From: Ascidiella aspersa | Taxonomy: Eukaryota | Direction: 5' to 3' | Assembly (NCBI GenBank): GCA_963924565.1 | Contig: OZ004610.1 | Location: forward strand, 30,194,001-30,258,000 | Length of the DNA stretch: 64,000 bases | In this document: one piece after another, positions 649 through 61,500 of the stretch | Layout of the letters: every line of letters starts with the position of its first letter | Position numbering within the stretch: position 1 is the stretch's first letter | Program-made: the position numbers and the translations under genes | Notes under the pieces: model-generated | The model's input: the letters and a program-made list of their open reading frames with translations, nothing else | Database searches by the model: none | What the model was told of the DNA's origin: nothing

Positions 649-866
649 AACAGGTGAATTGATCAATTGTGAAATTGCTATTTTGGCAAAATTTTAATAA
701 AGTACCAACGTTTCGACCACCTATTCTGGAATATACGTTACTAGAATTTCAAGAAACAGGTAAATTCATCAATTGTGAAATTGTTATTTTGGCAAAATTT
801 TAATAAAGTACCAACGTTTCGACCACCTATTCTGGAATATACGTTACTAGAATTTCAAGAAACTGG
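649..866. repeat. 106-bp tandem duplication (2 near-identical copies)
   Basis: AGTACCAACGTTTCGACCACC at 701 and 807. Confidence 0.9.
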
Positions 867-1135
867 CATTTGGTCATCACTGGACAATGGTTATACTCGG
901 AAAATCTTCAATGTTTCAGAATCAAGTTAAAAAAAAAGTATGTTGAACTTCCATACCTTAAGCTCGTGTTTTTAATGTTAAGTTTCTAAATAACAGCTGT
1001 TGATTTTGGTTCTTTAATAATTGGTTTTGCTTGTCAAAGCACCAGAATGTACATCCAGGTGAATCAATGGCATAAAGTTAAAAAATCAAAATCAATGCAT
1101 TTTGGTGACCCCGACGCAAAACGCGATGAACTCAC

Positions 1136-2235
1136 CGTCCGGATCCTCGGAGCTGGCCTGACTCAGCGAGTACGAGTGTCGAGCCGAACTCTGTCCACTC
1201 GAAGCCGAACTCGCACTCCGGGGCGAACTCTTCGGAGTCACTTCCAGTTCCTTCGGGACCTTGCTCTTGACCTTGACCTCTGCACTTTCCGGTTCGACGA
1301 GCACGTCCACGTAGACGGCGGGCAGGATTCCGGTGCTTCCCCCAACCTTGCCTTTGTACCTGGGTAATAGGAAATAGGCGTTGTTAGAAAATAGATTCGT
1401 GATTGGTAAAATATGCGTAGAAACGCCTAAAAGAGTAGTTTAATGTTGCATTTTTTAAATTAAATAAGATATTATCTTTTGAATTTTAACTTTTATTGTA
1501 AAGAGATGGAAATCACCATCTTGCCTTTGTGCCTGTGTAATAGGAAATAGGCGTTGTTAGAATATAGATTCGTGGTTGTGAAACTATGCGTAAAAACGTA
1601 TAAATGAGTCTTTGGTGTTGCATTTGTTTTCAACTAAATAAGATATCATCTTTAAAATATTATATTTTATTGTAAAAAAGATGTAATCATATCGATTGTG
1701 GATCATATGGTGTTAGTTTTTGAAAAGGTAATTCTTTACAGATTCCCGGGATGCCTTGATAAAGGCTTAGCGAAATCAGTCAGCCCAATAAGGATTGTAG
1801 TGCAAACAAGGTAAGGCTAAGATAACAAGTAGCCTGTGGTGAGGTTCGAACTTACGAATTGAAAGATTTTTTTAATTATCTTCAACTTTTTTTATGGTAT
1901 GAACTTGGATAAACGGCATAAAAAAAACAAGGGAACTTCTCTGCCACAAAGCCCGAAATCAAGATCAAGAAGGCTGTCAACTTCACAGCTCAACATATTA
2001 CATTTTACGTGATGCTTATAGTTATATACTTCTAAACTAATTTAAATAAAAAAAAACGCAACCGTTGAAACACAACAATGCACACTTACCAGTTGGCGTC
2101 TACTTTCTTGAGAAGCAGTATGTCGTCTCCCTTCTTAAATGACAGCTCGACTTTGGAGCTGCCGTTAAAGTCGAACTTGGCCTTGGCTTGGCCGTTGCGG
2201 GAAGGTTTTTCAGGCGAAGAGGATGGGGAAATAAT
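1136..2235 (-). CDS. SORBS exons (2090-2235, 1136-1359) encoding second SH3 domain
   Basis: [35 protein letters not shown]|[19 protein letters not shown]; the Trp codon is split TG|G across the intron. Confidence 0.93.
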
Positions 2236-5200
2236 CTGTGAGAGTTAGAGTTTTTGTCAGATTTACGTAAAAAGAAAAAACACCATTTATCTAACTCAGC
2301 GGTTCTTAACCAGTGGGCAATGAAAACATTTTGAGATGGGCCTCAGACCAATTTTAAAAAGCGTGATTTATTAGCGAATTTAGTTTCATTTATGTCGCTT
2401 TAGTTAATTTTACAGACTTTACTTAATTTTACAGGACTCACTAATGCACGGTGATGTTTTTTGTTCTCTAACCCTATTATATTTAAAAAAAATTATTGAG
2501 CCACAGAATTTTTGTGCAACGAAAATGGGTCACAAAAGAAAAAAAGGTTAAGAACCAGTGTAGCCTACTAACTGATTCCAACAAGTTTCAACATTTTTGG
2601 CCTCTACAAGCATCGTTTTTAGCCTGCTATACTTTTTACTAGCCAGTTTATCTGGGCACATAAATCAAACTTATATAATACATAGCTGGGAATTTTTTTT
2701 ATTCCCAATTACGAACATGCCATAAAACAGGGTAAATATTTAAAGGCGCTAAACGCATTCTTTTAAAAGTTAAATACATTTTTTATCTACTTCGAAACGT
2801 TCCACGGTAGGCTATCATACTATATATTTTAAATCTTTCTTAACGCTTCCTCCGGCCTTACAAATCACCAAAAGTATTGAACATGTGCGTAAGACGCTGG
2901 AAAAAAGTCAACCCAGAAAAAAATCAAAATCAATATCTTTAAAGCAAAGGAACAACCCGTACATCTAGGTATTGAACCGGTATGATTCCAGTCTGCTTGC
3001 CGTCGACGGTTTCAGCCTGGTACCAGTCCTCGTTCACCCGACGGGTCACGATCAGGGTCTGGCCTTTCTTGGCCGAAAGTTCCTTGGCCGTTTGGGCGCT
3101 GAAGTCGAATTTGGCGCGCGCCGGTTGACGCAGTTTGCTTTCCTGGTCAAGAAATTGCGAAAATTAAAGCAGTGATGGGTACACTATGGAGGATGCACGA
3201 TCTAGCTTGATATTGAATTGCGAAGCCAAAAAGGTCGAGTAGATCCGCATCAACTTTATTAAGACATTTCGATATGAACTTGTTTCGCTATCAGTTAATA
3301 TGACTGAGATGTAAGTCAAAGCATCGCTAAATTAATGTATGATAACTGACGCAGTTTGCTCCCCTGGTCAAGAAATTGCGAAAGTTAGAACAGGGTGGGG
3401 TACACTATGCACGGATCTGTGATGTGATAATGAATTGGAAAGTCAAAAAGGTCGAGTAGATTGACATCATCTTGATAAAAAAGTTTCGATACGAACTTGT
3501 ATCATCCTCAGGTGATGTAACTGAGAAGTAAATTGAAGCATCACTTATAAAAGGTGGGACGCAATACTTGCTTTAATATACTTCTCAGTCACATTTACTG
3601 AAGATGATGCAAGATTGATGGAAGCTCGAATCAAAACGTCTTATCAAAATGTTGTCGATCTATTCGACATTTTTGCCTTTACACTTCATTATTAAAATAT
3701 TAAACAGGGTTGCAATGCAAAAAAGTTTTGTTTTTCTAAACAGGATTGATGCTATTGTTTAAAAGTTTGGTCTGCATATAAGGCTATGGATCTTTTTTTA
3801 AGAGTAATCTTTTTTAAACCTATGAAATAGTGTTGGGTTTTAAACAGCTATTAGCACAATCAAACAGCCTCTATACAAGACCTGGGGAAACTAAGTTTCA
3901 ATCCGAAACCCAACCAAAGTAACTATACAACTCACAAAAAATAAACAAAGAGTACGTTATGTAGTCTGGTAATGATAAACAATTCATACTCCCTAAATAT
4001 TGAATCCCCTTTTTCTCGTAATACCCTGTATTGATAGCCGCACTGTCAATGCAGCAATTGCCTTTGTCAGCAGTTTAGCATCCAGTGGTGTGTAACAAGC
4101 GGTTGTGTGTTAATTGCATTAGGTTTTTGTTGGAGAGCCCGCTTCGACAAACAAAGTAGTAGAACGAACCTTGTACCAACGACATAAGACACACGACCTG
4201 GGTCACAGGTACAAATGACTTGAGTCACGTAGTCTACACGGCTATTATTACTCAACGATGGGTCCCTTTTAAGTGTCATAGTATCTTAAATAACTAATGT
4301 GACCTAGAAGTCGCGTTTCTAGCGCAATTGAACCGACAATTTAAATGGTAGCGGTAGAAAAGTATTTTTTGTTTTTCTAGTCTGCTGCCTTGTTGGCGCC
4401 ATTGATCGACATATTCGGTGAGTTTGCGATGGCTTTCGGTGTACTTATGATACGTAAGCCGTAATTGTTGGTCAAAATGCGGCTTACGAAGGGCTAGATC
4501 ACAGTTGTTAAACACATATGTATGTGTATCTTTCATTGGTTTGAAAAATAAATTATTTTTTTATTTAATTCTAGAACGTGTCAATCAACATATTCCCAAC
4601 GGCAGAAAACAATTAAAATAAAGTTACAAAAACAACACGAAAACAACTTTACAAAGGGTAGCTTTCTGATAACGTTGAAGGTTGCACTTTTTGCGCAAAC
4701 TCAGCGTCGCTAAATTGATCAATGACAGCTTCAACAAAGCAGGAAGTCACATCGTGTTCCTTTAAGCAGGGCGCAAACCTTACGCTGTGCACGGCTGACA
4801 CGTGTCAAGCTTACACACCTAAACAACGCTTTTTTTGGCCGCTCTTACAACAACCAAGTCGGTTTTTTTTTCTTACAACAACCAAGTCGTAAAAATGTGA
4901 AGTGGTGCCTTCCCTGTACTATTTAGAACCAACATAAACACATCGAACAAACATTGAAAAAAAATCAAAGGCTGGCTTTACAACTCTTTCATTTTGATCA
5001 ACAAAACTCTTTCAGGCATATCGGTAATTTCCTGAAATACCTAATAAAATGGCAAACCATTCTAATGCATGCTAATGGCGTTCTGTCTGGTATACTTAAT
5101 ATGCATTCGGCAAATATAAGATACTGAATGCCTTTTTGCGCACAAAAAGTTTAACAGATTAAAAATATGTACTCACATCTTTGCTTTGTGTTTTCGGTTT

Positions 5201-17200: not shown

Positions 17201-20200
17201 GATTTAACACAATTTAAACACTTTTAATAGTTTTATAATGGCACTTTTGAAAGACATGACTTAAGCTGGACATTTTTTAAATAACATAGGTTTTTTAAAA
17301 ACCTTTTTTATATGTAAATCAATTCAAAGATATTCAAACACTTGACTTTGTGGCAATCCTGTAGGAAAAATTGAATTTAAAAACATTCGCTTTGTGTACA
17401 TGAAGCCGCCTAAAAGTGGATAAAATGCCGTTACAAGGTCAAACTGGAGTATACAAGGGAAACGAAAACACAGAGCGTTACTACGATCGATTAATTAATA
17501 CATCGCTTCGCTTACACGGCTTCGTTACAAGCACATCATTGCAGTCTTTGTTGTCACACAAAGATACGCAAATTTTAACTAAGACCATGTCAGCAATTTG
17601 CGTTGAAACAAATATAACTGGAACTTTTCTATGTTGGTACTTCGTCCCTAGTGGATTTTTGGAACAAAATGCGTAAAGTAGAAATAAATTCACTTACTGA
17701 GATAAACTATGTTTAAAAATCTAAATCAGATAAAATCAGATATTTATAAACTTAGTGCCTTGAAATTACAACAGTTGTTTGTTGTGCGACTTTGCCAATT
17801 TCGTGAAGTTCAAAGCAACAGAAGCACAAATGTTGAACTGTTCAACTTACTTTACTGAAACTTGGTCAATGGCAGAGGCTGGTCGCTCGTCATTTCCTGT
17901 ACACAGAGTAAGAGTTTTAAATCATTCGGCGAAAAAGCTATCCAAAAAAACTAGTCATGCATTTATAAATTGTACTAATGCAAGATGATTTGCAAGAGTA
18001 GAAATTAAAATCCACTACATATATATATAGCATATACGCTTGAGATTTTTTAACAAAGGTAAACTTTACTAATATACAATAATTCACAGATGATCAGGTG
18101 TGCAGTAAACATTGAAATACGCATAAATTAACGCAATCCAGAAAAAAATGTCATGACTGCTTGGAAATATTCAGCAGCATTAAATAGGTCGAGCAAATGA
18201 ACATTATCTTAAAAATGAAGTTTCGAAACCCACTTTGTGAAATCTATTTAAATATTTCTAAAAGGCGGAATGCAATCCTTATTATTATGAGTTTTCAATC
18301 GTCCAGAGCTCATTAATAAGCATATTCAGGTTATGAAAAGGTACAGCGGTGTGCAAGTGTTACAAGTATATATTGAAACATATTTTTTAAGATAATGTAG
18401 ATTTAACTTTTTTTTAGCTTTGACATTAATTTTCAAGCCATATTGGAAAATATTAAGCAGTATAAAGCTGATAATATTAAGCAGCATTAGCGAATATACA
18501 ACCCACCTTCTCCCGTTTCAATCTTGTGCATTTGCTTGAACATGTTCTTGTACCAATGCTTGGAATCGTCGACCGTCTGAAACCGCACAATCAACAAGGT
18601 TAGGCGCGAGCATGTCCGACCGTATACGGCGCTCATAATCTGCTCCCTGTTTATCTTAGTGGCGACATTAGACGTTTGCTTCTCAGCAAATGTCGCGATT
18701 ACGTCACTGGTGTTTAAACTGTGTATTGCGCCATACTTCGTGATCAGTTTGGTTTGACTAATAGCAAAGGATATGACCTTCACCTTCTAGCGTAGGCCTA
18801 CTGGTTTTATGTAAACGTTTAAATTGAAATCGATTTTTTTTCACAGGCGTACATGGAACAGCTTACAATTACGACATTGTATACTCGAGCCAACGGGTTA
18901 TACGTCACAACAAGTTGAATCTCCAGCAATAGGTCGGGTGACGTTTAAGCTGATTAACTCGGTTAACAAAAAATCCAATATTATGTGTTTAGTTTTCTGC
19001 ACAAAACAGTGACACAAGTTGGGCGAAAACGAGTGGTTGTGATATTTAGGACAGTAGTTTATCATTGTGCATACAAACGACATTGTAGGTGTGTACTTTA
19101 TTGATTTGATTCACTTGGAAGCTGGTAGGCTGGTCCAAGCATTGTGTACCGATGTAAACCGGAAATTTTATTCGCTTTGATACCAAATGGTCCACTTTTT
19201 GAGAATCAACAGCTGTTTTTATTAAACCCTATTTCAAACGTGTGCCACTACACAATCCAATTACACCTTAGATTTGAATGCCAAAGGCACTGTGTACCAA
19301 GTATAGTGAAAAGAAGATCGCTATTTGCGAAATATAAATTCACATCGTCGGCAAATAACACAAACGCCAAATGGGCGTCACAGAAATGACAGAGACAAAC
19401 CGCAGACAACGACGGCGCGAAAGATTAAAAGTCACGCCCGTGAAATCCGCACCGCAAGGGGGTTCTTAAACTAGAGTCCTACTTTTAAGACTAGTTTTAG
19501 GGGTCCATGACGGCCTAATGGAAATATAAGTGTATAGTTAAAGAAGTAATCATTTTTTAGAAAAATACTTCAATTAAAATAAAGCGGTTTTGGACTGAAT
19601 GTAGACTCATTTACACTTTCACATTTTTTGGACAGAAATCAGCAGATTTCTGAAGTCTATTTGTGTTATTACAACAATTCGTGACGTCATTTTTGGAAAA
19701 TTGGTTCACACGCTGAGCCAAAAAACAATTTAGGCGTCCGCAGTAAAAAAAAGTTTAAGAAACTCAGTGTACTTTCTTATTTGTCACACAGCCACCAAGG
19801 AAATATTTTCGCAAATTCGTTTCTCCCCAAATTAAATGTTTACGTAAAGCGTAGGCAGCATACGGAATAGGAATTGAGTCTTATCTATAAGCCACGATAA
19901 GGCGTGTAGGCTATATCGGTTACATCAGGACACAAATATGAGCTATCAGTGATGAATTGGACAAAAAGCGCCAAACGTTTAACACGTTCTAATGGCATCA
20001 AGCCGTTTTACTAGTACTTTTGTTTTTTCCACGATTAAATTTTTAGATCAATTACACCAGGTTACACCATGTACGGATCTGTAATGTAGCTTGATAATGA
20101 ATTTCAAAGGCAAAAAGGTCGAGTAAATCGGCACCATTTCAATCAAAATTAACTGAAGATGATACAAGTTCGTATCGAAACGTCTTAAAAAAGGTGATGT

Positions 20201-23200
20201 CGATCTACTCGACCTTTTTGGCTTTGTAATTTGTCATTATCAAGCAATAATACACCAATTTGTACTAGAATTCATTATCCAGCAATAGTACACCACTTTA
20301 TTTTCATAAGCCTGTTGCTTTGGCTGTGTGACGATGCATTCTATACCACATTTTACGCACAAAACAGCAACAAGACAAGCCACTTACACTTCGCAGGGCA
20401 AAGGGGACGCCGTTGTCGTTCACAGGTCCGATGCCGGTGTGGTGAGGCGCCTTGAACAGGGTGGTTTTCTTGGTGCGTTCCAGCACGACCGACTGGTGGT
20501 TGCCGTTATCCGCGGCGGGGTAGTACGTGTCCGTGTGAACAAGCTCGCCTACAGAGAGAGAGAGAGAGGCGTCAAATGATTCCCTTTTTGTTTGGTTAAA
20601 GAGAATCGATGTACTTTCTGCAAAAAGGCTACGGAAAACGTATACCACTTGTTTTATTTGTGTCCTGTGGCGTGTTTATTCTGGGAAAACGTGAGCGCGT
20701 GGTTTAAGTATGAAACTACGAATATCGTGTATTTTCCCCCGAGCAATTACTCTTCGGAGTGCACAAAGAACATTTGTGAATTGTGTCCTTTTATATGCAA
20801 GGTATACTGTATGTAATTTATCAATGTGTACCATGTTACGCTTTTTCGCTATGTTATCTTCTGTGCGAACTTTCGAGCGATATTCGGCTTTAAAAGGAGG
20901 AAGTATGGCGATATACAAAAGTACATGGTCGTTAGCTGCCTGAGAGCTTTTCTATTATAATTTGTTTTCCGAGTGCCTTTTGCGCCATTTTTGTTAATAA
21001 AAAAAAACACTAAAAAAAGAGGGAGAGAGACAGCACGTTTTAACATTTAGCGTACATAAAACATAACTTAGCCTCATAGGCTCAAAGAATAAAGCAGCAA
21101 TAACCGTGAGGTGTTTGGGTTTGTTTGGTACATTTTGTCTGTTAAAACAGTAAGCGTATAAGAAATATTTCTTATAGTGCTAAATACACAATTTTCCTTA
21201 AAAGTAAATACCGCCGTATTTTCCGATCATTGCAAGCGAAACTTTAAAAACAAAAATTCAGCGAAATGACTGCAGATGCCAAATCCGTAAACCGCGGTGA
21301 TTTTTAGTGCTTAAATTTGTTTTCCGAAATTTTACAATGTCAACAAACGTGCTTTAGAAATTAAAACGAAAGTACCTAGTGAACGGGTTAAATGTATGCA
21401 CGCTATGACAGAAAATGAATATGTGATAATGGAAATTTTTTGACCCTTGCAAGATAAATGTCGACCTCAATTCCTGATCAGTAACAGCAGAATACTCTAG
21501 CAAATCAGGTCAGACACTATTAAAAGATCTTATATTTATATATATAGTTCGTCAGCAAAGGCATCGAATGATTCATTCGAATTAAGATATACTGACGATG
21601 CCTTTGCTGGCGAAATATATATATAAATATATATGTTAAGATCTTTTAATAGTGTCTGAACTGAATTGCTAGCTTTGCGTATACTGCTGTAATATGAAAA
21701 TAGGTTTATGGTTGTACCTTATCTGCTAACAATGGTGGACTAAGCACTCTTATAGCATTCCTTAATAAATTAATTTTCTGAAAATGTAGAATAATAATAA
21801 ATGTGCTTTAGATATCAAGGCCAAAATACTACGGAAACTCGGCAAAAGTATGCACCATTTCAAAAATATATAGGTTTATGGTTGTACCTTATCTGCTAAC
21901 AAAAGTGGACTAAGCACTCTTAGCCTTCCTTACCTTCCTGGGTTGTTGTTTGATAGACAGCGCCTTCGGGAAGCTTCTCATTCGGGGTAATTCCAGTCTT
22001 GGCTGCACAAACAAATCGGTCAGCTGTTAACTGACACAGTCAACTATAAGCGTGACCTATGTGACCAGCTTAAGAAATTAGAAACATTTGTTACCGTGAT
22101 TCACTGCTCTATATTTCCCAGATTACAACTAGGGAAGTGAGATATTAGGCGAACCTAGGGTGGTTTCGGCGCCGATCCAATTAGTAATGACGTCATTTAT
22201 GGAATAGGATCGGATCACGATATTTTTCTCCAAAATATCGGTTATCGCAATCGAAATAAAATGCCGAGTATAGGAAATCCGTAATTCGAATCGTGTATGC
22301 GTGGTCATGTGCATTGTACAGTGAATAAAGTGGTTTGAGTGACCGAAGTGCCTCCTTGACTTTTTACTGGTTAAAATATACTTGTACACCTACAGTAAGA
22401 TCATTGCCGATAATTCTAGACTTTTTGGTGGAAATTAAAAGGTCCAATTTTGTAATTATCAGTGTTTTGAAAATTCCTTTGCGGTCACAAAAGCCAAACA
22501 TTAGAAAAACCCTCATTGTACCAATGACCACCTGGCTTGAACAACAGTTTCATTTAAAACCGTGCCTTTGTCATAAAATGGCCTATGCTGAGCTAATAGC
22601 TAGGTTGACAGTTTACTGAACATTATTTCGAACATCATGAGCGCATTGGGCATATCTAATACAAGCGTGTTTGCTTGTACGTTAGCGTTGTATATTGTTC
22701 GACTAAATATGTCGTCATGTTACACACCGAAAAACATTGTTAAAATGGACAAAAATGAAACAAAATAGCATACTGCAGTGTTAAAGCAGTGCTTCTGTGC
22801 GTGTAACTTGATTGTTTTTGACTAATTGTAATTTTATGATATAACACCCATTAATTAATATAACCGCATGACAGATTTTTGGTAAATCGCTTTACTGAAA
22901 AAAGGTTTAAACATGAAATTAGTAGGAAAAGAAAAAATGGCATCGAAATTATACACAAAGAATAAAGACCTAGGGTGACAAACGATGTTATTTAAAGTCA
23001 TACTCAACAGCGGCCAACTTTGAAAAACCGGTTAAACCATTGTTTGAAACAAGGAAATCCGCCCGGTTATAGAAACAATAGTCGGTGCATTCTTACCATT
23101 TTGCGAAGTTGGGAAGGGTTTTCCTGCCACAGAGAAAGTGCTGGAACTCTCAACCTTGGCTTGGGATGAGTTGCTTGGTTTCTGCAATGCAAAAATTCAA

Positions 23201-33177: not shown

Positions 33178-33496
33178 AATGAATTGCAAAGCCAAAAAGG
33201 TCGAGTTGATCGACATCACCTTAATTATGACGTTTCGATACGAAGTTGTATCATCTTCAGTTAATGTCATAATGTCATTATCTGAAGATAATATAGGTTT
33301 AAATATGCTGTTGCTACCAGGCATAGTATATTTAAAATAGGTTATTCTGGCATATATTTCTATAACCAACGTTATATAATATAAGTTTGTATAGAAACGT
33401 ATTAATCAAGATGATGTTGATCTACTCGGCCTTTTTGATTTTGCAATTAATTACCAAGCTACATTACATACCCGTACATACTACATAGTGTACCCA
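33178..33496. mobile_element. Family A foldback element
   Basis: Left arm carries the minus-strand hammerhead; right arm is a degenerate plus copy ending CATAGTGTACCC. Confidence 0.7.
33225..33264 (-). ncRNA. Minimal hammerhead ribozyme motif, family A, intact core
   Basis: Minus strand TTAA-CTGAAGA-T-GATAC-aacttc-GTATC-GAAA-C-GTC-ATAA; first stem I pair mismatched. Confidence 0.72.
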
Positions 33497-34314
33497 ACGA
33501 AAATGACTTTTCAACAAAAAGCGGTTTAAACTTTTTAAACACAAAAGGCGCGCTTCGAAGCTTTAGTTGGTAAAAAATTTCCTAATCTGAAGCCATGGCA
33601 GTTTACAATGCTATGAAGCCATAACCAACATCAACAATTCTATTTCTTTAAACCGAAGTGTTTGCGTCTGATCTAACAGTGTGAAATTTTTCACTACCAT
33701 CGACTAACCACCACCAGCCGAGTTTCTAACGCCGATGCGCCGTCTGGCGCGACTGGTAATCCTCGAAGGTAAATAAACTCTTTCCTTCCTAAAACAAAAC
33801 GAACGGCGGCGTTGAATTTACCGGGTAACGTTTTCCTACATAATCAAGGCCGAGTATGTCTGCCGCTTACTTTAAAATTTCAAGCTGTGACAATTTGTAA
33901 GCTGATCGAGAATTTTCTTTACGCTAATCTGTCAAAATTGAAGCTTGCCGTTTGGCAACCGTATACATCAAACGACGGCGCAATGGTTGTAAAATGTTAA
34001 GTAGGGCATTTTCTGCGATTAGCAGAAATTAAACGTATTAATACTCGACTCATAAGCGTATCTATAAATGACCAAATATAGCAGAAGCTTCCCAAACGAA
34101 TATAATAATATAAACTACTAAACAAAGGAAAGCTGCCATTGCCAATAGATCGCAAAATATAGCTGGAAAACTCAGCACCATACAGTGGTACGAAACACTT
34201 GCTTCTTCTTTGAAACGGGACCTGGCCGATATTTTGTAACTACTATTTTTTCAGACAAAAGGCCGGCGGGTTAGTGTGCTTTATATAGCTTGCAAGGCTA
34301 AATATTTTAACGAT

Positions 34315-35106: not shown

Positions 35107-35135
35107 CTTTAGTGCGCCGGTGTGTTGCATTAATA

Positions 35136-40752: not shown

Positions 40753-43700
40753 ATGTACTCACCAACAGTAAGTTTTGTTTAGGAATAATTAAACATATTC
40801 CAACATATGTGCAGGTCTAAGGTGGTAACAGAAAACATTCTGAGGCGGTAACAAACCTGACTGCATACCATAACTTGTGGACACCAAAGATTTGGGCGCT
40901 CCTTCAGTTGTGCATGTAGAAATATATGCAAGCACATTGTTAGTGTTTGGGTGAGGGTGGGTCGAGTGTTATTATTAATTGACCCACCCTAACCCAAACC
41001 ATGTACATTGTGGTATGCTGTATTTTTTGTTTGTTTTTTTGCATAACTGAAGGAGCGCCAAGATTTGCGCCAAAAATTCTTTTATCTAAAATCCTATGTT
41101 AAACTAAGACAACGTATATGACAAGAAATGACTATTTTTTAATAAATTTACTAGGCTGTTGATATTTCACGCCAAATGGTCACTGACGTGATTTACGGCA
41201 GCATTCTATGCCAAAGATCTTTGGCGGGAAGGTACAGGAATGCAATCGGGGCAACAGAAAGCACTGCTTTAAAATGGAAAACATTTCTACTTAGGTTGGA
41301 ACGATTTACATTTTCAATCTAATTGTTGGAACTGGAGCACTAACTCTTCCAAAAGCTATGAGCTCAGCTGGTTGGCTTCTCAGTTTGATTCTTCTCTGTG
41401 TGTTAGGAACAATGAGGTATGTTGAAGCTATTAAAAGTTTAAGCCAATTAAATCTTGGAAGATGCTTTTTACCTGGACACTAAAGTAGTTTAAATTGGCA
41501 TATGTTCACTAACGGGCGCAATGGGCAGATAGCGTATGGGCACTTCCTCAGGCTATTTACACAGCTAACAAAGTAATTTAAATCTATTAAGAATAATGCA
41601 TAAAAGTTATGCAAACGGTGCAGTTTAAAATTAATTCTACCCCACCCAAACCCGAACGGGGACCCCAACCTTAACCTAAATCAATGCCTAATCACATATG
41701 CATAAGGATAAAAGTGGAAAAGAGCATTTTGGGCAAATAGCCACTTCCTAAATCTTTTACTTTACTTAAATAGACGTAATGGCAATTCAGTATAAAGCTA
41801 AAAACTTAACATCTGGTTTTTAATTTTTACTTTTCTAATCAATGTAGTTACATCACAACAACATTTGTTGTAGAGTCTCTCTCTATTGCAAATGCCTGTA
41901 TTCGCGAAAACAAGAAGGATTCAATTGACGAGGTTTTAGATTGTTATACTATTTATTATACCTCATGGTGGCAATATATGTTTATTTATGGTCATTTTGT
42001 TATATTAGGACACTGATGCAGCTGAAGGAATTGATTCTGAATACAGTGATAATGACTATTCCAAAAACACAAACGTGCGCATACGGACAAAAGATCATTC
42101 AGAGCAAACTCACTTGTTAGTTGATACTGCTCCATGTAAGAAAAGATAATATGAAAATAAATTTCATGTATTAATCTATTGATGTTACTTTCAAACATAC
42201 TGTGTTTATAATGTTAAAAAAAACGTTTTTTCCTCGTTTTAATAAAGTATTCTTTGTACTCGAAATGATGTCTTTCCCATAGAAAGTTAGCTATATTTTT
42301 CACCAATGTTTTCTACCTCATTTTAATATGTCTTTAAAGATTTAAGCCAGTGCTTCCCAACCAGTGGGTCGCACCCCATTGATGGGTCACAAAGCTATTT
42401 CAGGTGGGTTGCGAGGCATTTCTAAATATTACCGTTTTCTATTAGATCGGGAAATTATTGCATTATATTGTTATTTTTCTGATTAATTTGTTTTTCATTT
42501 GTTTGGTAATATCTCATTGTGGGTCGCACAATAAAACTTGCATTAAAAGTGGGTCGCGAACTGAAAAAGTTTGGGAAGCACTGATTTAAGCAATTATTTG
42601 ATGTATTTTGCAGCTACCGGTTATAGCAGAAGTCGATCACTTTCGCAAACTGACGAATTTGAAATCACACAAGCAGTGGAGATGGGTGGAATGGCCGACA
42701 TGTTTTTCAACAAAGGTAGCAAGCCGCCCAATTTAGTTTTAGTGATATGTTTGCTGTTTTTACCAAATACATACTGTAATACAAGGCAGATACTGGAAAA
42801 AGAATCTTAGTTAATTATTATTAGGCAACATTTATTTTTTAAGTGGTTAGGACTTAGAAGTGAATATAAAAGACCACAATAAGTATATTTTAAACTATTA
42901 CAAGTATTTATGTTACATTGGTGTAGGCATAGAATAACACAAAAACTTGTCTTCAAAACATCCCACTCATCCGAGGTACATCTTATTTCCTTTGCCCCTA
43001 ATTTTAGTTATATTTTAAGTTGGAAGAACGCTGTTCTACCTCTGCATTGCGATTTATCTCTATGGCGACTTGGCTATATATGCAGCTGCTGTACCAAAAT
43101 CGTTGAGAGACATTGTGTGGTAAGAAACAAAAATAATTTTAAAAAATTAAAAAAAATGTTTTTTTTGTTTGGCCCAGCTTCAAACTGTTTATTTGGATTA
43201 ACTAAGAGTTTTATTGCAAAAAATGTGTTTTTATCCAATTGTAAATTAGTAAACCTAATTGTTTTTGCTGTGCTCCCATATGTGATATTTATGTTTTTTT
43301 TTTATTTAAAACAAATTAATGAAAAAACAACCTATTGTTTATTTTAAAACTTTACTTTCAGCCAAAACATGTCATGTGCAGCAAACTCATCCGATCCGCC
43401 ATCGGACAATGATATTTGCTGGGGAAAAACTGTGACAAGAATGGATGTTTATAGAATATTTGTTGTAAGTGATACAATCAAAAAGTGTTTTAAGCAAACA
43501 AACAATATCACTTTCATTATCAAACCTTTGTAATAAAACATGATCCAACTGAAACAATTTGTTACAATGTGTTCACCAATTTTATTAAAAATAGTTGCTT
43601 ACTATACTGTCTGTTTTCAATTAATATAATCTATCAAAATTAGGCCATCTGAACTCTTTTAAATTAAGTTAGCACTTAAACGAAATAGTTCAACTGTTTT

Positions 43701-46700
43701 TAATGTTTCTTTGATAACTTGCCTTTCAATTGGCGCAATATATATTTTTTTATTTTTTAGGCTATTTTTGCTGTCGTCCTGGGCCCTTTTACCTACTTCA
43801 GTGTTCAGAAAACCAAGTATCTGCAAATCCTCACAACGCTGTGCCGTTGGATAGGTAAGCTGACTAACATAGTTATGATAATGATCAAAACCAGCTTCTC
43901 TGGTAATTGTATTTGTTAACCAACATTTCGGCAACCTATTCAAATAACCTTCGCCAGGGTGAATGACACTGAACGCTGTACTACGAGCGACGAGCGTGTA
44001 CTACGAGCGTTCGATGTCATTCACCCTGACGAAGGCGATTTAAATAAGTTGCCGAGACGTTGGTGAACAATTACAATTACCAGAGGAGATGTTATTTTGT
44101 GATTTTTATGACTAGGCCTGGTAGCAACAGTTTATATATAGTTGTTATGTGCCAGTGTATAATGTGCAAATTTTTATACTATATATTGTAAGCAGATGTG
44201 CCACACCAAAATTTGTATAAAGCATTTATGTCCTTAAACTAGGCCAAATTCTGTCCATATACAGACTGCATATCACGTTCAAGGGCGTCACAAAGGATAT
44301 TTCAACTAAAAAAATACATATTCTCCCCCTGATGTAATAAAGGAAAATTTTCCCATAAATGTCAGTAAATATTTAGACGAAATTAAAACTTAGTTGCTGT
44401 CAATCAGCGCTTTAAGAAATCTAACAAAAAACATTTAGTCAAGTTATTCCACAACCAGACTTATAATGATTTAAACAAAATTCTAATGAATTAAAAGTTC
44501 GTACCATGTGATCTCAAGATTTACTTTTAACAGCCGAACGCGCTTTCTAATACAAACAAAACAAAGCAAAGCTTTCGTGGTGGCATATCTGCTTGTCGGG
44601 AAGTTAGTGTTGATTTGCCTGGACATTATTGTCATCGCAGTGCTAGGTCAAATCTTATTTGGGCGATATTTCGAACGAATTTAAGGTTAAGTATCTATAC
44701 CTCGTCAGTTATACAAAACTCCTAGACTGGCCTCATTTTATAAAAAAAGGTCAGAAAGGGGTTTCAAACTTCTCTAAAAATCGATGTTTTACGTTTAAAA
44801 AAACACCTGAAATAAACACTTCACGAAAAATGCCGTTTTTTCTGCAGCCTTCATAACGATGATAGCCCTCGCCAGCGCTCACATGGCTCGCCAAGGTGCG
44901 ACTGCAAAACCACCGGTGGCCAACTTAGCCGGCGTTCCCAACCTCTTCGGCGTATCTGTGTACTCGTTCATGTGCCAGCACTCGCTACCGTCGCTGGTGA
45001 CTCCTATCCGTGAAAAACGCAACCTTTATAGGATTCTGGCCTCCGACTACCTCCTTATACTGCTCTTCTATGCGCTGCTTGGCTTCACCGCTGTTTTTTG
45101 CTTCTCCAGTGACGCCCTTATGGACGTCTACACCCTCAATTTTCAGGTAGGTTCGTTTTTTTTTCGCGAAATGAAACCGAAATGTGGTTTGTGTGCGATT
45201 CGCTTTGAAATGACAAGAGGGCGTTATAGACGAAGCGACTGTTCAATTCGATTTCATCTGTAAAGTACATTGGTTAAACAAGTGGTTCTCAAACTGGGGT
45301 CCGCGGTCCATTTGGGGTCCGCGAGACAATTTTCTGGGACCGCGAAGCACCAAAAATCAACTAGACCTCCTAAAGGAGAACATTTTAATTTCAACGTGTT
45401 TGCGCCTGTCATCAAAAGCTACGATTAGTTGTTCATTCACGTGATTGCATGCTTTGAGCTGGATTGTGCATTGTGACGTCATAATGATGCGTTGTGCTAA
45501 TAAGAATTACGTTTCTACAGCTTGCTGTGCTGCCATTTTGTGGGTTGTACGGTCGCGGTTTTAAAACTTATAGTGATGGTTTCACTCAAATAAAGTGATT
45601 TTGTGAGCGTTACAATACGGCATAGCCTACCTAAGACTGTAAGAGCACCCGTCCCATCAAAACGTGTTATTTTATGTTTATTTGTGTGTATTTTTCAGGG
45701 AACCGCGAGCAATTGAAAAAATTGCTAGGGGACCGTTGGGTAATTTTTTAGAAAAAGTTTGAGAACTACTGGGTTAAGCCAAGTCGTCTAAAAAATACCC
45801 TACGAACGCGCTTTGCAGGATAGAACTATCAGAGGAAGGAAAAAACTAAGTTAGTCAATTATAACGTAGCATTAAGACCGGGCCAAGAGGTTTCGCTACA
45901 AAAATAGCACAAGTACCTTGTACAATCGCCAGTAATGATTGTTTTTTTCACAAATTATGTCGTAGATAATGTTTATAGTCTGTTACATTATATATATTTT
46001 CTAAAATGTCGCAGATGTGTCTTAGTTTAGTCGTTTACAAAATTATTTATTTCTACAAATCTTGTCTACAAGATAACTAATCAAGGCACATTCTAAGAGT
46101 AAGTCATAATTTTTCAAAAAATATTTTATAACCCAGAATAGCACAAACACAACCTAAAATCAATGGAATAGTAATTAGTTATCTATATGTAAAAAAGTAC
46201 CGTTTGATCAAATAGATCAAATCTCTTTGATTCTAGATAGGAGTTTATAGTCTTGATTTCTATATATCAGTTTGTAGTCAAAAAGTATTTTCAATTTTTT
46301 ATACAATAGGCCTACATAATGCATTGCTCCTACAACTGATATTTCTACTGTATTACATTTAGGCTTATTGCAAGTTTCAACAATGAAATCCTTCTTTAAA
46401 AATTAATTTTGATTGTTGTCGCAGGATTCCTGTTACGTCACAGACGTCGCATTCCTCCGCTACTTTCTCGGCCTGTTTCCCGTTTTCACGCTTTCCACAA
46501 ACTTTCCCATTATCGCCGTTACCCTCCGAAACAACCTAAAGGTATATTTCGACCAAGTGCAATTTTTTACGTTTTTTTGAGAAAGGTTTTAGTTGTTTCT
46601 TGTTGAGTGGCATGACAGTGCCATCATTTGCGGAATATATATGTTTTGTATCTCCTTACTGAACATGACATTTTGGTCGCGCACCACCTTATAAATTGTT

Positions 46701-50085: not shown

Positions 50086-50122
50086 CCCCCTTTATTGGGT
50101 CGCCTACTGCAGTAGTTTTATA

Positions 50123-51140: not shown

Positions 51141-51582
51141 CAGGGGTGTCCAACAAGCGGTACGCGTGCCAAATGTGGAAGGCGACCTATTGAAAAATGG
51201 CACGCAAGCCCCCCTAAATTACTTAATTTTTTATTCAGCCAATTGTCAAAAAATACTTATTTTTTTATACAGTAAATTGTCATTGTTTATTCACAATATA
51301 AAACAATCGCGACAACTAACAATTACTTCTAATACTATAACATTATATTGTAGTGGAGGCTAGCATTCACATAACTATAAAGTTTGGTGTGAAGAAACAA
51401 AAAGCCAAAGACAGCTCACCGACGGACACTTAGATGCAGTTATGCGCACTGTTACTACACGTTTTTATTATTTGTAAAAAAACGCTTTTATTATTAGAAA
51501 GAATTAGTTTCTAAACTTTGGAACGGAAAGAAGTAATAGGATAAAAATTGGCAAGCCGGCATGTTTGAGTTTGACACCCCTG
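51141..51582. mobile_element. hAT MITE, apparently nested in an older small element (~51112-51616)
   Basis: CAGGGGTGTCCAAC / TTTGACACCCCTG; perfect TSD GCTTAGGG. Confidence 0.85.
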
Positions 51583-51634
51583 GCTTAGGGCCCCTAAAAT
51601 ACAAGATCCGGCCCGGCAAGTATATAGCCACGTC

Positions 51635-55716
<4,082 letters not shown>

Positions 55717-55774
55717 TTTGCTATGCTATCGCGTTGCTGTTCACCAGCTAACTGACTCCGTGCGTGTTTTGGCG

Positions 55775-55910
55775 CCGCTATATATGCCAGCTAGCTCGCG
55801 GTGAAATTTTCTAATCTTGCTTTGCGTCGCGTGTAGTCTACAAGTCTCAGAACCAATTTACCGCGCGTTTTGCGGGTGGGAAATTACCTGCTCAAATTTT
55901 ACAATCTTGC
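55775..55910 (-). promoter_or_regulatory. Putative ficolin promoter (TATA-like box and kappaB-like site)
   Basis: Minus-strand TATATAG ~65 nt upstream of the ATG; GGGAAATTACC at 55878-55888. Confidence 0.4.
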
Positions 55911-58397: not shown

Positions 58398-58544
58398 ATG
58401 GCCTTATAAATCCTCCCCAACATGTCTATTGCCGTCGACATCTCTCAATCTGTCCGCTCGTCCTTTTTCGCCTCTTGCAAGCAATCCTACTGCCATGTCT
58501 TCCCGTTCGGGTGTGGCACCGATCGCCAAAGTTTCCAGCTCTGA
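58398..58544 (+). promoter_or_regulatory. Two uORFs in the RNF10 leader: 3-codon uORF (58398-58409) and 40-codon uORF (58422-58544) overlapping the main ATG out of frame
   Basis: aacATGGCCTTATAA; caacATGTCT...TGA; main gccATGT at 58495 lies 73 nt after the uORF2 start. Confidence 0.65.
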
Positions 58545-61500
58545 AAATGTATGCGCGAAACAAAAAGAAGGTAAGTGACTTGTTTGCCAAATTTCTCCAT
58601 AGAGAGATTTTGCAGTTTAAAACAACCAGAAATTATATTGTGAGAAAAAAACATGTTGGACCTTTTTAATTTATCTTTAACTTCAAAGTTTGTAAACTAT
58701 ATCAGTCATACATTTAGAGTCCCATTATTTGAAATTAAATATATATAGGACATGCTTAATTGTTAAAAACTGTCACGTTGCTAAACACAACACATATATT
58801 TTATAATGTGCCTTTGTTCAAGATAATTATGTTTTTTTGATAAGTTAAGTGTTGTTTCTTAGATCGTCCCCGCAGCAACAACACAACCAAGTTTATCGCC
58901 AAACAACAGCGTCAGGAATTTAACAACCAAAGAAATGCCAGTGCATCAAACCACAGCCGCTACAACGCCAACAATCACAAACAACCGAAAACAAGAAATG
59001 CACACAAATCTTGGGGTGGAAGAAGAAATCAGGTATATAAATCTAAACAAGGAGTAAACTGTCATCACAGAGTTTCTTGAAACTCTGTCAATAAAAATAT
59101 AGATTTGTTCTTTTTAGCGATTTTTTAATTTATTATTCATACTAAAATGTTGTACATAGGTAACTTGTCAAATTTAGGGAAATTTTAACTCCTAAATTAA
59201 AAAAAAAAAAACATGCTCTAGGAATTATCTTAGGAAATCTCTCTTTTGTGAGTTGGCTCTTAACTTACTGTCATTAAATTGACCAGAAAAGCACTCCTTT
59301 AACTTCTATATTATACTGGTTAAAAAATTGGCTTTTTTTGACAATAACTTTGCTGATACTTTACCCATAATTGCACAAACTGTTTAGGTGAAGTCTGAAC
59401 AGCGCGATGCATTCTCACCTATTCCGGTGGAACAGCATGGCAGCAAGAAGACCAACCTGAATCATTTGCTCAATTTCACGTTTGAATCAGATGCTGATGA
59501 TTTTCGTGTTAGCAACAGTGCAAGACCTAAAGGGTCCTATAACTGGCACAATAGCTACAAGGCAGTTTTCAACAAGGAACAGTTTATACAGGCTAAGTAA
59601 GTGGCCTAAACCAATTTTAGAAATTTTCTTTAAAAATCCTTACGTTGTTCTATTTAAAATTGAATCTAAATTTAGAAAAAAAATTTCAATTGTTTTTTAT
59701 GTAAAATGTTTTATTTTTATATGGAACACTTTAATTTTCATTTAGCTAGCCAATTAATATGTATCCAACTTTAAACAGATTTAAAATTTATCGAATTTCT
59801 TGTTTTAAATCTTTAATACAAGAACCATTTTCCGGTTGTTGTTATTTAAAAGAATTGTTATTTTATTTGAAAATTATTAACCACAGTTGCATTTTAGCAT
59901 CATTTTATTCAACAATTTTTATTTTCAGCTGCCAACTGGTCGTAAAGTCTGGACCTGATTACAGTGCATTTCAAAACGATGCTGACCTTGTTATTGATTG
60001 GGAATTGGTTGAAAAAGTGGTGAGTTCACAGTTCAGGCTGTTACTAGCTCTTTTCAGGAAATTGTAGTTATTCAGTTATCACAGATAATTGGAACTGTAA
60101 CGTGGTCCATTGTGTTTTTTCCTTCATTGTTTGCCTGGTTTATGTATATATATTTTCACCTATGGTTGCAAAAATGCCCCCCTGAAGATTGCCCGAATAG
60201 ATGGTTGAAACGTTGGTACTATAATCAATTTTTGGAAGAACAATTTTACAAACAAACAATGCGTGGCAGCAACAGTATATTCAAATAAAATTGGATTATA
60301 AAAATTTGTGTCTTTTAGACCAATCTAGTGCTGGTTCTGTGTATTGACTTAACCCTAAAAGAGCAACAAATTTGTTTTTGTGATTAGGTTTAGTAATTGA
60401 TTAAACTTTTATAAAGCCTATTTAATATATTCTTTGTTTATTTCCTTTTTTTACTAGAATATGTGGAGTCCAGAAATCCCTCTGTGTCCGATCTGCTTGG
60501 ATGAACCTTACGCTGCCAGAGTCACCAAGTGTGGCCACATCTACTGCTGGCCTTGCATCTTACACTACTTGGCCATTGATGACAAGAAGTGGAGAAAATG
60601 CCCCATTTGTCATGAGGCAGTTCATAAAAGCGATTTGAAAAGGTAAGAAACTGTACAAGACTTTTAAGAACTGACTCTCTTTTCAAAATTCTTTCAGTGT
60701 TAAAAAAATCTTGCTGTGGTTTGTACACTTTTTATTAAATGGATTTGTTACCTTGGCATTATAAATAAATCGGAAAATATGATTTTATTAACACCAAATT
60801 TGTTTTGAATTTAATTATCTGATGTACTCGGGACTTCTGTTTTCAACATCAAGGATTTGAGATTTAGATCTATTAACAATAGTCAAAACAATTTTTGACT
60901 CGCTTTTCATACATTCAGCATGTTTACGATTTTTAAACTTGTATTTATAACCAGTACTGTACTTACAATGTGATGTGCTGTTAATTAGTTTACTATATTT
61001 TTGTGTTCCATTACAAAATAAGCAGTTTAATATGACCTTTGCATCTCATTTAGTGTGTCAGTATTCAAGGAGCAACTTTACAACCAGCAGCAGGTCATTA
61101 CAATGCAGTTAATGAGACGGACCAAGGGATCTATTGTGGCATGCCCAGTAACCCACGATACTGAGTCCGACGCTGACAACTCCATGTTCCAGTTCTCTGG
61201 AAAAAAGGAAAGTTCTTTGGTATGTTAACATACTAGGCATGCTACATGGTTAAAAGTACAGTTTAAGTTTGGAAAACCAAGTTATATATATTAGTGTTGT
61301 TTAAAGTTTAAACATTTTTTATGGTTCGGTTTATCAAGCTTTTTTTCATGGTTTAAACTTCAAAACTGGAATGATAAAAGAATTATGAAAAAAATGCTAT
61401 TATTTTCAAATGGCTTGTCAAGCTTAAAAGTTAAAAATACTATTAAAAGCGCCAATTTTCAGAAATTTCATGTGTATTATAGTTTAAAATTTTGCTATAA

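What the first reader, a model, noticed from the sequence alone, without database searches (positions are those of the whole stretch)
701..60216. Multiple unrelated families of minimal hammerhead ribozymes, mostly in tail-outward foldback elements
Seen: about a dozen intact or decayed hammerhead motifs in 64 kb, in at least 4 families with no shared flanking sequence (A: 3.3k, 3.5k, 3.6k, 20.2k, 33.2k, 53.7k; B: 21.6k; C: 43.9k, 44.0k; D: 60.2k, 0.7k, 0.8k). All share one plan: CTGANGA, one extra nucleotide, stem II, GAAA, a loopless palindromic stem III (ACGT or ATAT), the cleavage triplet, then stem I. Stems I and II differ between families but keep pairing. In families A-C the motifs lie in 200-300-bp inverted repeats, with the left motif on the minus strand and the right on the plus strand. 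Known: minimal hammerheads with palindromic stem III that cleave as dimers typify Penelope-like element pLTRs, which often insert inverted. Inference: an abundant class of non-autonomous, ribozyme-bearing retro-foldback elements (retrozyme-like) that repeat finders would mislabel as DNA MITEs.
Basis: partly seen in the sequence, partly recalled or inferred. Interest (0 to 1): 0.88.

Follow-up and report, generated by a model that had tools for sequence, protein, structure and literature searches.

The report
Truncated Penelope retroelement ends with hammerheads
The hammerhead ribozyme motifs are real, but they lie in the last ~100-150 bases of Penelope-like retrotransposons, whose published insertion mechanism already explains the inverted-repeat "foldbacks", so this is a clear example of a known kind rather than a new class.

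Summary
All twelve listed motifs exist at the stated places. They follow the plan described: CUGANGA, one unpaired base, stem II, GAAA, an ACGU or AUAU palindrome, then stem I. Only two are fully intact (20153-20184 and 21592-21619); the rest are decayed.

Genome-wide there are about 5,900 intact motifs against about 240 in reversed-pattern controls. Stems I and II covary between families.

The Penelope-like element (PLE) link is now direct for families C and D. In locus L053 the family C unit starts about 60 nt, and its hammerhead about 110 nt, after the stop codon of a reverse transcriptase plus GIY-YIG endonuclease reading frame. Family C copies form a ladder of 5' truncations reaching into that frame. 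The 5' part of family D overlaps an endonuclease C-terminus.

The foldbacks show the published PLE insertion signature:
- two inverted 5'-truncated copies with their 3' ends outward;
- a 28-35 nt tail at one end only (28 of 30 family A foldbacks, 9-10 of 12 family C foldbacks);
- AT-rich target-site duplications of variable length, 7-16 bp.

They are neither DNA MITEs nor retrozyme-like circles. No reading-frame-bearing master was found for families A and B, so a dedicated non-autonomous status stays open for them.

RNA-seq gave only background coverage and no read ends at the cleavage site.

First-stage notes on other windows of this genome report the same kind of element; none has been followed up.

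The parts
20060..20254 (.). Family A foldback. The inverted 5'-truncated arm with its tail is on the left (about 20060-20136). The sense arm is on the right (about 20137-20254).
   Evidence: Inverted arms 20100-20136 and 20195-20231 are 86% complementary. BLAST to the family A unit matches on both strands. More than 30 genomic copies align end to end.
20153..20184 (+). Intact family A minimal hammerhead: CUGAAGA, unpaired U, 5-bp stem II, GAAA, ACGU palindrome, GUC. Predicted cleavage falls between 20184 and 20185. Stem I is the 4-bp UUAA/UUAA pairing.
   Evidence: It passes the strict descriptor. The exact 32-mer occurs 435 times in the genome against 0 for the control.
21484..21690 (.). Family B foldback. 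The left arm (-) is truncated inside the hammerhead. The right arm (+) carries the whole motif.
   Evidence: Inverted arms 21497-21566 and 21596-21672 are 94% complementary; BLAST agrees. DNA depth over this stretch shows it is a multi-copy repeat.
21592..21619 (+). Intact family B minimal hammerhead: CUGACGA, unpaired U, 3-bp GCC/GGC stem II, GAAA, AUAU palindrome, H = A, 5-bp stem I.
   Evidence: It passes the strict descriptor. The AUAU class has 1,878 genomic matches against 134 for the control, and many have the same GCC...GGC stem.
3176..3305 (-). Family A arm with tail. The hammerhead core is decayed.
   Evidence: 80% identity to the family A unit, unit positions 50-180. Sequence read.
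3398..3518 (-). Family A arm with tail. The core and stem II are intact (3484-3511), but the ACGU palindrome has been deleted. This arm is a local 222-bp tandem duplicate of the 3176-3305 arm together with about 55 nt of flank.
3587..3695 (+). Family A arm facing the 3398-3518 arm. The hammerhead is decayed, with an insertion in stem II.
   Evidence: 76% identity to the family A unit. Sequence read.
33178..33267 (-). Family A arm without tail. The hammerhead at 33229-33260 has an intact core and stem II, but stem I is broken.
   Evidence: arms 33174-33254 and 33376-33456.
33376..33502 (+). Family A arm with tail, partner of the 33178-33267 arm. The hammerhead is decayed. The 121-nt centre between the two arms holds a family C/D-type tail fragment (33302-33324, minus strand).
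53585..53690 (-). Solo family A arm. The hammerhead core is decayed (CCGATGA).
   Evidence: 76% identity to the family A unit. Sequence read.
43884..43977 (-). Family C arm without tail. The hammerhead at 43922-43957 has CUGGCGA in place of the core and AUGU in place of ACGU.
   Evidence: 89% identity to the 3' end of the L053 PLE. Sequence read.
44002..44130 (+). Family C arm (44002-44096) followed by its roughly 30-nt tail containing GCCTGGTAGCAACAG. The hammerhead at 44026-44061 has GAGA instead of GAAA. A target-site duplication of about 9-12 bp (ATAGTT..TTATG) flanks the foldback.
60115..60283 (+). Solo family D copy ending in the GGCAGCAACAGTATATTCA tail. The hammerhead at 60182-60214 has lost 3 nt relative to most genomic copies, which breaks stem II.
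   Evidence: 78% identity to unit D. Alignment of 31 genomic copies.
663..835 (-). Two head-to-tail 106-bp units of a D-related variant. They keep GAAACGUU and stem I but have no CUGANGA.
   Evidence: Matches to unit D positions 144-210 at 88-90% identity. Sequence read.

Best explanation
The motifs are the minimal hammerheads (min-HHRs) that Penelope-like retrotransposons (PLEs) carry close to their 3' end. In families A, C and D the ribozyme sits 45-55 nt upstream of the proximal 3' end of the element, and about 70 nt upstream in family B. Almost any 5'-truncated copy therefore keeps it, which is why thousands are scattered through the genome.

The foldbacks are single insertion events. The PLE endonuclease cuts both target strands, and each 3'-OH primes reverse transcription of element RNA. 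The two cDNAs run toward each other and are joined at a variable point. The result is two inverted, 5'-truncated copies with 3' ends outward, flanked by one target-site duplication.

Reverse transcription can start at either of two sites about 30-35 nt apart. This produces the optional tail, which is nearly always present on one arm only.

- Shown here: the anatomy, the physical link of families C and D to an RT/GIY-YIG reading frame, the truncation ladder, the variable duplications, the one-sided tail, and the covariation of stems.
- Taken from published biochemistry and inferred here: double-strand priming and the two start sites.
- Not shown anywhere: what the ribozyme does for the element. 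Published work finds weak, dimer-dependent or protein-assisted cleavage that is dispensable for insertion in vitro.
For: **Link to a coding PLE.**
- L053 encodes an RT fragment (GSPVS...RYVDD) followed by a GIY-YIG nuclease (GVVYSIPCADCNLVYIGETGR).
- Its stop codon is at 1417-1419. The family C unit starts about 60 nt downstream and its hammerhead about 110 nt downstream, on the same strand.
- Family C copies start at L053 positions 1317, 1346, 1360, 1369, 1390, 1426, 1465 ... 1534, and all end at about 1596-1612.
- At three further loci, endonuclease-coding matches lie immediately upstream of family C units (C2:19.77 Mb, C1:22.06 Mb, C4:18.12 Mb).
- The 5' part of family D overlaps endonuclease C-terminal coding remnants in L065, L066, L074 and L079.
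- A further family, J, shows endonuclease, then hammerhead, then the GCCTGGCAGCAACAG tail in order at C1:1.418 Mb, with an inverted partner hammerhead upstream.

**PLE abundance and architecture genome-wide.**
- At least 875 endonuclease candidates exist, and all 150 that were scored have E<1e-30. Open frames reach 815 aa.
- Their start points form a ladder, and there are at least six head-to-head (-)(+) pairs.
- Pfam GIY-YIG matches exceed the family cut-off.

**Foldback anatomy.**
- 28 of 30 family A foldbacks have a 33-35 nt tail on exactly one arm. Their target-site duplications are 7-16 bp and AT-rich.
- 9-10 of 12 family C foldbacks have one tail, with duplications of 8-12 bp.

**Ribozyme structure.** Across 22 sequences from at least 7 families the covariation score is 0.59, against 0.24 in shuffles (0 of 500 reach it) and at most 0.17 when partners are slid. 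The three innermost stem I pairs are paired in 19-21 of 22 sequences, although stem I was not a selection criterion.

**Literature.**
- PMC4209133 describes the same min-HHR, including the unpaired base 5' of stem II, the long helix II and the short helix I.
- PMC8557442 describes the inverted 5'-truncated copies and the 30-40 bp tail at one end.
- PMC11167929 shows both strands cut and extended, and the tail as the interval between two RT start sites.
Against: - For families A and B, the two with intact motifs in this window, no reading-frame-bearing copy was found. None of the first 100 listed exact family A hammerheads lies next to any listed endonuclease match. All 30 fetched family A copies are short foldbacks.
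- The L053 reading frame has two in-frame stops. Its RT and endonuclease pieces score below Pfam's cut-offs on their own.
- Thermodynamic folding alone prefers an alternative pairing to the hammerhead fold.
- RNA-seq shows no read ends at the cleavage site.
Confidence: 0.85

Rival explanations
1. Families A and B (and perhaps others) are dedicated non-autonomous mini-PLEs. These would be short non-coding RNAs that keep only the hammerhead, the RT-recognition region and the tail, and are copied in trans by PLE proteins. They would be an invertebrate, foldback-forming counterpart of the proposal that animal retrozymes are non-autonomous PLEs. This refines the best explanation for A and B rather than excluding it.
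For: - Family A appears to be the most abundant family. It had about 2,000 first-look candidates, 435 exact 32-mers, and DNA word depth about 10^4 times that of unique sequence (a rough measure).
- All 30 fetched family A copies are 290 bp or shorter.
- No listed endonuclease or GIY-YIG match lies beside a listed family A hammerhead. By contrast, five of the 20 distinct family C loci fetched reach into the reading frame.
- Non-autonomous PLE derivatives are documented (PMC8557442 for Chlamys elements; bioRxiv 10.64898/2026.07.22.740005 for vertebrate retrozymes).
Against: - The family A loci were chosen by similarity to a short foldback, which biases them toward short copies.
- Only 150 of at least 875 endonuclease candidates, and 100 of 435 family A motifs, were listed, so the adjacency test is weak.
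- The family A sense arm extends at least 60 nt upstream of the ribozyme in two loci, and no defined 5' end was found.
Confidence: 0.35
2. The elements are retrozyme-like. Tandem or dimeric units would be transcribed, self-cleave at the hammerheads, and circularise, with the circular RNA then copied back into DNA.
For: - Occasional head-to-tail copies exist: the tandem family A units in L012 and the 106-bp tandem at 663-835.
- A palindromic helix III implies that two ribozyme copies are needed for activity (PMC4209133).
- A first-stage note on another window reports a 197-nt tandem with hammerheads. That note is unchecked.
Against: - The window's only tandem lacks the catalytic core.
- The dominant arrangement is inverted, which would sequester a sense ribozyme in a long hairpin.
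- RNA depth per unit of DNA depth over families A and B (about 0.8-1.3 per thousand) is no higher than over neighbouring unrelated repeats (about 1-3 per thousand). No molecule ends pile up at 20184/20185 or 21619/21620, and no back-joins were reported.
- Published retrozymes carry canonical type I hammerheads with loop-loop contacts, not min-HHRs (PMC7229834).
Confidence: 0.06
3. The elements are DNA-transposon MITEs whose terminal inverted repeats contain hammerhead-like strings by chance.
For: They are short, AT-rich, palindromic and abundant. Their hairpins give sub-threshold matches to microRNA models in Rfam.
Against: - The two termini differ, with a tail on one arm only in 28 of 30 foldbacks.
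- Target-site duplication length varies from 7 to 16 bp.
- The central junction varies between copies.
- There is a ladder of 5' truncations into an RT/endonuclease reading frame.
- Motifs are enriched 14- to 38-fold over reversed controls, and the stems covary.
Confidence: 0.02

Closest known systems
Minimal hammerheads (min-HHR) of metazoan Penelope-like elements (Cervera and de la Pena 2014, PMC4209133)
   Same: - The CUGANGA/GAAA core.
- No helix III hairpin, only a palindrome that can pair between two copies.
- An unpaired base at the 5' end of stem II.
- A long helix II (5-8 bp here) and a short helix I (3-5 bp).
- Several sequence families per genome, with thousands of copies.
- A location next to the PLE reading frame.
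   Different: - Family B and its relatives have a very short (3-4 bp) GCC/GGC stem II and an AUAU rather than ACGU palindrome.
- Catalysis was not tested here.
Canonical EN+ PLE insertion architecture (Craig et al. 2021, PMC8557442) and its biochemical basis in an Anolis Poseidon element (Frangieh et al. 2024, PMC11167929)
   Same: - Heavy 5' truncation.
- An inverted 5'-truncated copy joined head to head.
[quoted passage not shown]
- AT-rich targets.
- A hammerhead a short distance upstream of the RT start sites.
- RNA-seq shows no ends at the ribozyme site.
   Different: - Here the arms are often only 90-170 nt, so the insertion looks like a MITE.
- The tail is on exactly one arm in 28 of 30 family A foldbacks. 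That is stricter than two independent choices of start site would give.
- In this genome's family C element the ribozyme follows the stop codon, whereas in the Anolis element it overlaps the start codon.
Animal non-LTR retrozymes (Cervera and de la Pena 2020, PMC7229834; Li et al. 2026 preprint, 10.64898/2026.07.22.740005)
   Same: - Hammerhead-bearing non-coding repeats.
- A proposed dependence on PLE enzymes.
   Different: - Retrozymes are tandem 170-400 bp units with canonical type I ribozymes, and they are abundant as linear and circular RNA.
- Here the units are inverted, the ribozymes are minimal, and RNA is at background level.

Membership tests
Penelope-like element (canonical EN+ clade) | Single reading frame with a reverse transcriptase followed by a C-terminal GIY-YIG endonuclease | tested here: met
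   - L053 positions 412-1416 encode RT motifs (GSPVS, RYVDD), then GVVYSIPCADCNLVYIGETGR...EH.
- Pfam scores are RVT_1 E=0.015 and GIY-YIG E=5.8e-4, both below the cut-offs for these fragments.
- The nearest Atlas clusters are eukaryotic GIY-YIG/HTH_animal proteins.
- Genome-wide GIY-YIG matches exceed the cut-off, with open frames up to 816 aa.
- This copy has two in-frame stops.
Penelope-like element (canonical EN+ clade) | Hammerhead motif in the untranslated repeat next to the reading frame | tested here: met
   The family C hammerhead lies about 110 nt after the L053 stop codon. The same order is seen at three more loci and for family J.
Penelope-like element (canonical EN+ clade) | Frequent 5' truncation and an adjacent inverted 5'-truncated copy | tested here: met
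   Truncation ladders appear at the DNA level and the protein level. Foldbacks are documented.
Penelope-like element (canonical EN+ clade) | [quoted passage not shown] | tested here: met
   Family A has a 33-35 nt tail on one arm in 28 of 30 foldbacks. Family C has a 27-33 nt tail on one arm in 9-10 of 12.
Penelope-like element (canonical EN+ clade) | Direct pseudo-LTRs flanking a full-length reading frame (partial tandem) | not tested
A 3,422-bp periodic array of GIY-YIG matches at C2:30.63 Mb hints at tandems.
Minimal hammerhead ribozyme (min-HHR) | Conserved core, paired stems I and II with covariation, and a palindrome in place of helix III | tested here: met
Minimal hammerhead ribozyme (min-HHR) | Self-cleavage at the predicted site, as a dimer or with protein | not testable with these tools
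   RNA-seq shows no ends at the site. Folding energies do not favour the active fold. Published min-HHRs cleave poorly in vitro.
Animal non-LTR retrozyme | Tandem unit repeats with intact ribozymes, expressed as abundant unit-length linear and circular RNA | tested here: not met
   The only tandem in the window lacks the core. RNA is at background level, with no ends or back-joins. This rests on one RNA run, about 6% of it sampled.
MITE (DNA transposon derivative) | Symmetric terminal inverted repeats and a target-site duplication of fixed length | tested here: not met
   The ends are asymmetric and the duplications range from 7 to 16 bp.

The most novel reading that the evidence does not exclude
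Two linked readings are not excluded.

(1) Family A, the commonest hammerhead repeat here, and family B have no coding master. They would be dedicated mini-PLEs of roughly 150-250 nt, copied in trans. Such a MITE-like, foldback-forming class of non-autonomous PLE has not been described for invertebrates.

(2) The near-absolute rule of one tail per foldback (28 of 30) means the two RT start sites are not chosen independently. One reading is that the two protomers of a dimeric PLE protein sit on adjacent sites of one RNA, and each serves one target strand. The genomic fossils would then record the geometry of the insertion complex.
Probability: 0.3. Interest if true: 0.45.

Novelty: new member of a known kind. 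Interest (0 to 1): 0.25.

Why it matters
Practically, these short palindromic repeats number in the thousands, sit mostly in introns, and would be mislabelled as MITEs or hairpin RNA genes. Several already give sub-threshold matches to microRNA models. Annotating them as truncated PLE ends would correct this genome's repeat library.

Scientifically, the foldbacks are a large natural sample of PLE insertion products. The variable junctions, the one-sided tails and the target-site duplications can be counted to test the recently proposed double-strand priming and two-start-site mechanism.

The existence and architecture of the ribozymes, and their link to PLEs, are already published, so the finding confirms rather than discovers.

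Tried and rejected
- **Rfam.** It gave no hammerhead match at the gathering score or at E<=10, on the whole window or on a 141-nt cut-out. I attribute this to the missing helix III hairpin (my inference) and do not count it against the motif.
- **Chance matches.** The pattern hits at 37612-37812 lie inside a 1,012-codon open frame and have no stems, so I discarded them.
- **Longer family A variant.** A query from L072 recovered mostly family D and another unrelated repeat, which said nothing about family A.
- **Coordinate adjacency.** Exact family A hammerheads were compared with the listed endonuclease matches. Only one pair lay 3.2 kb apart (C2:22.84 Mb). About 0.1 such pairs are expected by chance, so I did not count it.
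- **Junctions as fossils of self-cleavage.** In about 25 family A foldbacks the inner ends of the short arms scatter from -10 to +25 around the cleavage site, with no sharp peak at +1. The sample was also biased by how it was fetched, so nothing can be concluded.
- **RNA evidence.** One run, about 6% sampled, showed repeat-level coverage on both strands and no coverage of the unique flanks. It showed no pile-up of ends and no supported back-joins.
- **Folding.** The monomer, the dimer and a natural tandem all adopt alternative pairings or arm-to-arm hairpins rather than the hammerhead fold.
- **Sequences left alone.** The N-run in L053 (115-214) was left as it is.

Full report

Reading the listed places shows the stated plan at each one: CUGANGA, one unpaired base, a stem II hairpin, GAAA, a four-base palindrome (ACGU or AUAU), a non-G base, then a strand complementary to the bases just upstream of CUGA.

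- An inverted-repeat search confirms the foldbacks at 20.1, 21.5, 33.2 and 43.9 kb.
- A strict descriptor finds two fully intact motifs (20153-20184 and 21592-21619) against 0.005 expected in shuffled sequence. The other copies are decayed in identifiable ways, listed under the parts.
- Rfam reports no hammerhead at any threshold. I attribute this to the absence of a helix III hairpin (my inference).
- Genome-wide the ACGU type occurs 4,061 times against 108 for the reversed pattern. The AUAU type occurs 1,878 times against 134.
- The listed matches fall into at least nine different stem II sequences, and all of them pair.

**2. Is it a ribozyme structure rather than a shared string?**

I aligned 22 motifs from at least seven families and counted pairs for a hand-written structure.

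- The four outer stem II pairs alternate between G-C, A-U, C-G, U-A and wobble pairs, with 97.7% of cells paired.
- The three innermost stem I pairs are paired in 19-21 of 22 sequences with different pair types. Stem I played no part in selecting the sequences.
- The covariation score is 0.59. Shuffles give 0.24 (0 of 500 reach the observed value), and slid partners give at most 0.17.

The claim that the families share no flanks is only partly correct. Families C and D have similar loop II and 3'-stem sequences. Both end in a GCCTGGYAGCAACAG tail, whose 20-mer occurs 656 times in the genome against 0 for the control.

**3. What are the elements?**

Each family is highly repeated. First-look candidates numbered about 2,000 for A, about 1,100 for C and about 550 for D.

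The decisive result came from locus L053, which was fetched as a family C hit.

- Upstream of the family C unit, on the same strand, lies a reading frame with RT motifs (GSPVS, RYVDD).
- After the NGYP linker typical of PLEs comes a GIY-YIG nuclease (GVVYSIPCADCNLVYIGETGR...EH).
- The stop codon is at 1417-1419. The unit begins about 60 nt downstream and the hammerhead about 110 nt downstream.

Comparing L053 with all loci shows that family C copies begin at positions 1317, 1346, 1360, 1369, 1390, 1393, 1426, 1465 ... 1534, and all end at about 1596-1612. This is a 5'-truncation ladder with a fixed 3' end. Four copies still encode the last 23-33 residues of the nuclease.

Searching the genome with the nuclease piece gave at least 875 candidates. 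The 150 scored fall into identity tiers near 90%, 72%, 55% and 40%.

- Their starts again form a ladder.
- Open frames reach 815 aa.
- Three of these matches sit directly upstream of family C units listed.

The 5' part of family D overlaps nuclease C-terminal remnants in L065, L066, L074 and L079. A further family, J, shows nuclease, hammerhead and GCCTGGCAGCAACAG tail in order at C1:1.418 Mb.

Families C and D are therefore the 3' ends of coding PLEs, not a separate class.

**4. Why foldbacks?**

In 30 family A loci the two arms face outward with their 3' ends, and the central junction differs from copy to copy.

- The whole is flanked by AT-rich direct repeats of 7-16 bp. Examples are TGTAAAAAC, TTTAGGTAAA, ATACTGGTATA and a 16-mer in L007.
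- 28 of 30 foldbacks carry a 33-35 nt extension on exactly one arm.
- Family C foldbacks behave the same way. One tail of about 30 nt is present in 9-10 of 12, and the duplications are 8-12 bp.
- The same head-to-head, tail-outward arrangement occurs between long copies whose junction lies inside the nuclease domain, at six or more places.

These features match published descriptions.

- Craig et al. 2021 (PMC8557442) describe heavy 5' truncation, an adjacent inverted 5'-truncated copy, and a 30-40 bp tail often present at only one end.
- Frangieh et al. 2024 (PMC11167929) showed that a purified PLE protein cuts and extends both target strands. It starts reverse transcription at two adjacent internal sites, and the interval between them is the tail.
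- The ribozyme plan itself, including the unpaired base 5' of stem II, the long helix II, the short helix I and thousands of copies in several families, is the min-HHR of Cervera and de la Pena 2014 (PMC4209133).

**5. Function of the ribozyme.**

I could not show cleavage.

- In one RNA-seq run (about 6% sampled, reads accepted from 82% likeness) families A and B are covered on both strands.
- The ratio of that coverage to DNA depth is no higher than for neighbouring unrelated repeats.
- The unique flanks are silent, and no molecule ends accumulate at the predicted sites.
- Predicted folds favour arm-to-arm hairpins or a competing pairing.

This agrees with the literature. Cleavage is weak and dimer-dependent in vitro (PMC4209133). 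In the Anolis element it is protein-assisted and not needed for insertion, and no RNA-seq ends were seen there either (PMC11167929).

The abundance of the motif needs no function in each copy. In families A, C and D the ribozyme lies 45-55 nt from the proximal RT start site, and about 70 nt in family B. Truncated copies inherit it.

**6. What remains open.**

No coding copy was found for families A and B.

- All fetched family A copies are short, although they were chosen by similarity to a short query.
- None of the 100 listed exact family A motifs lies beside a listed nuclease match. Both lists are partial.
- After 90 loci no more genome sequence could be fetched. Full-length elements, pseudo-LTRs and the masters of A and B were therefore not examined.
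- A dedicated non-autonomous status for A and B is plausible (about 0.35) but untested.

**7. Verdict.**

The motifs and the architecture are real and far beyond chance. The PLE interpretation is correct, and for families C and D it is now tied to a reading frame.

The proposed new class is mostly the known behaviour of PLEs at the short end of their truncation range.

First-stage notes on other windows of this genome describe the same kind of elements (for example s1-788292 and s1-787245). They are unchecked, and I used them as leads only.

Noticed in passing
window:33268-33375, especially 33302-33324 (-): The 121-nt centre of the family A foldback contains a fragment of the family C/D-type tail (revcomp of ATGCCTGGTAGCAACAGCATAT). 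It is either a nested mini-insertion or a template switch between RNAs of two PLE families during junction formation.
   Followed up: partly
window:3100-3520: A local 222-bp tandem duplication comprises a family A arm with its tail plus about 55 nt of flanking non-element sequence. Because other family A copies have unrelated flanks, this looks like a post-insertion duplication rather than a longer element. Another first-stage note links it to a duplicated splice acceptor.
   Followed up: partly
window:29436-29550, 30500-30579, 40928-41015: Hairpins rich in GGGTTTGGGT give sub-threshold matches to several microRNA models. The best is mir-1265 at 33.9 bits against a gathering score of 79. They look like a separate palindromic repeat family with no hammerhead.
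   Followed up: no
window:36251-39286 (-): A 1,012-codon open frame, probably a large host exon, contains repeated CTGAAGA...GAAA strings. These account for four chance hits of the loose hammerhead pattern.
   Followed up: no
window:19400-19800 and 20600-21010: Two further multi-copy repeats without hammerheads are transcribed at about the same RNA-to-DNA depth ratio as families A and B. Their DNA word depth is 100-600 times that of unique sequence.
   Followed up: no
L072:1762-1878 (G000:C5:1.2195 Mb): A roughly 115-nt repeat has many genomic copies at 90-94% identity, which suggests a young family. It is unrelated to families A-D.
   Followed up: no
G000:C2:30628752-30640503: Five GIY-YIG matches lie here. 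Four are on the same strand at an exact 3,422-bp spacing, each in a frame of up to 293 aa. This looks like a tandem PLE array and is a good place to read pseudo-LTRs.
   Followed up: no
L004:446-487, L006:1428-1469, L022:95-141: Three more intact min-HHR families turned up by chance in the flanks of family A loci. They have AUAU or AUGU palindromes and GCCG/UGGC, GCU/AGC and GCCAU/AUGGC stems. Intact motifs therefore occur about once per 30-50 kb.
   Followed up: partly
L053:115-214: A run of N lies inside the RT-coding part of the PLE copy.
   Followed up: no
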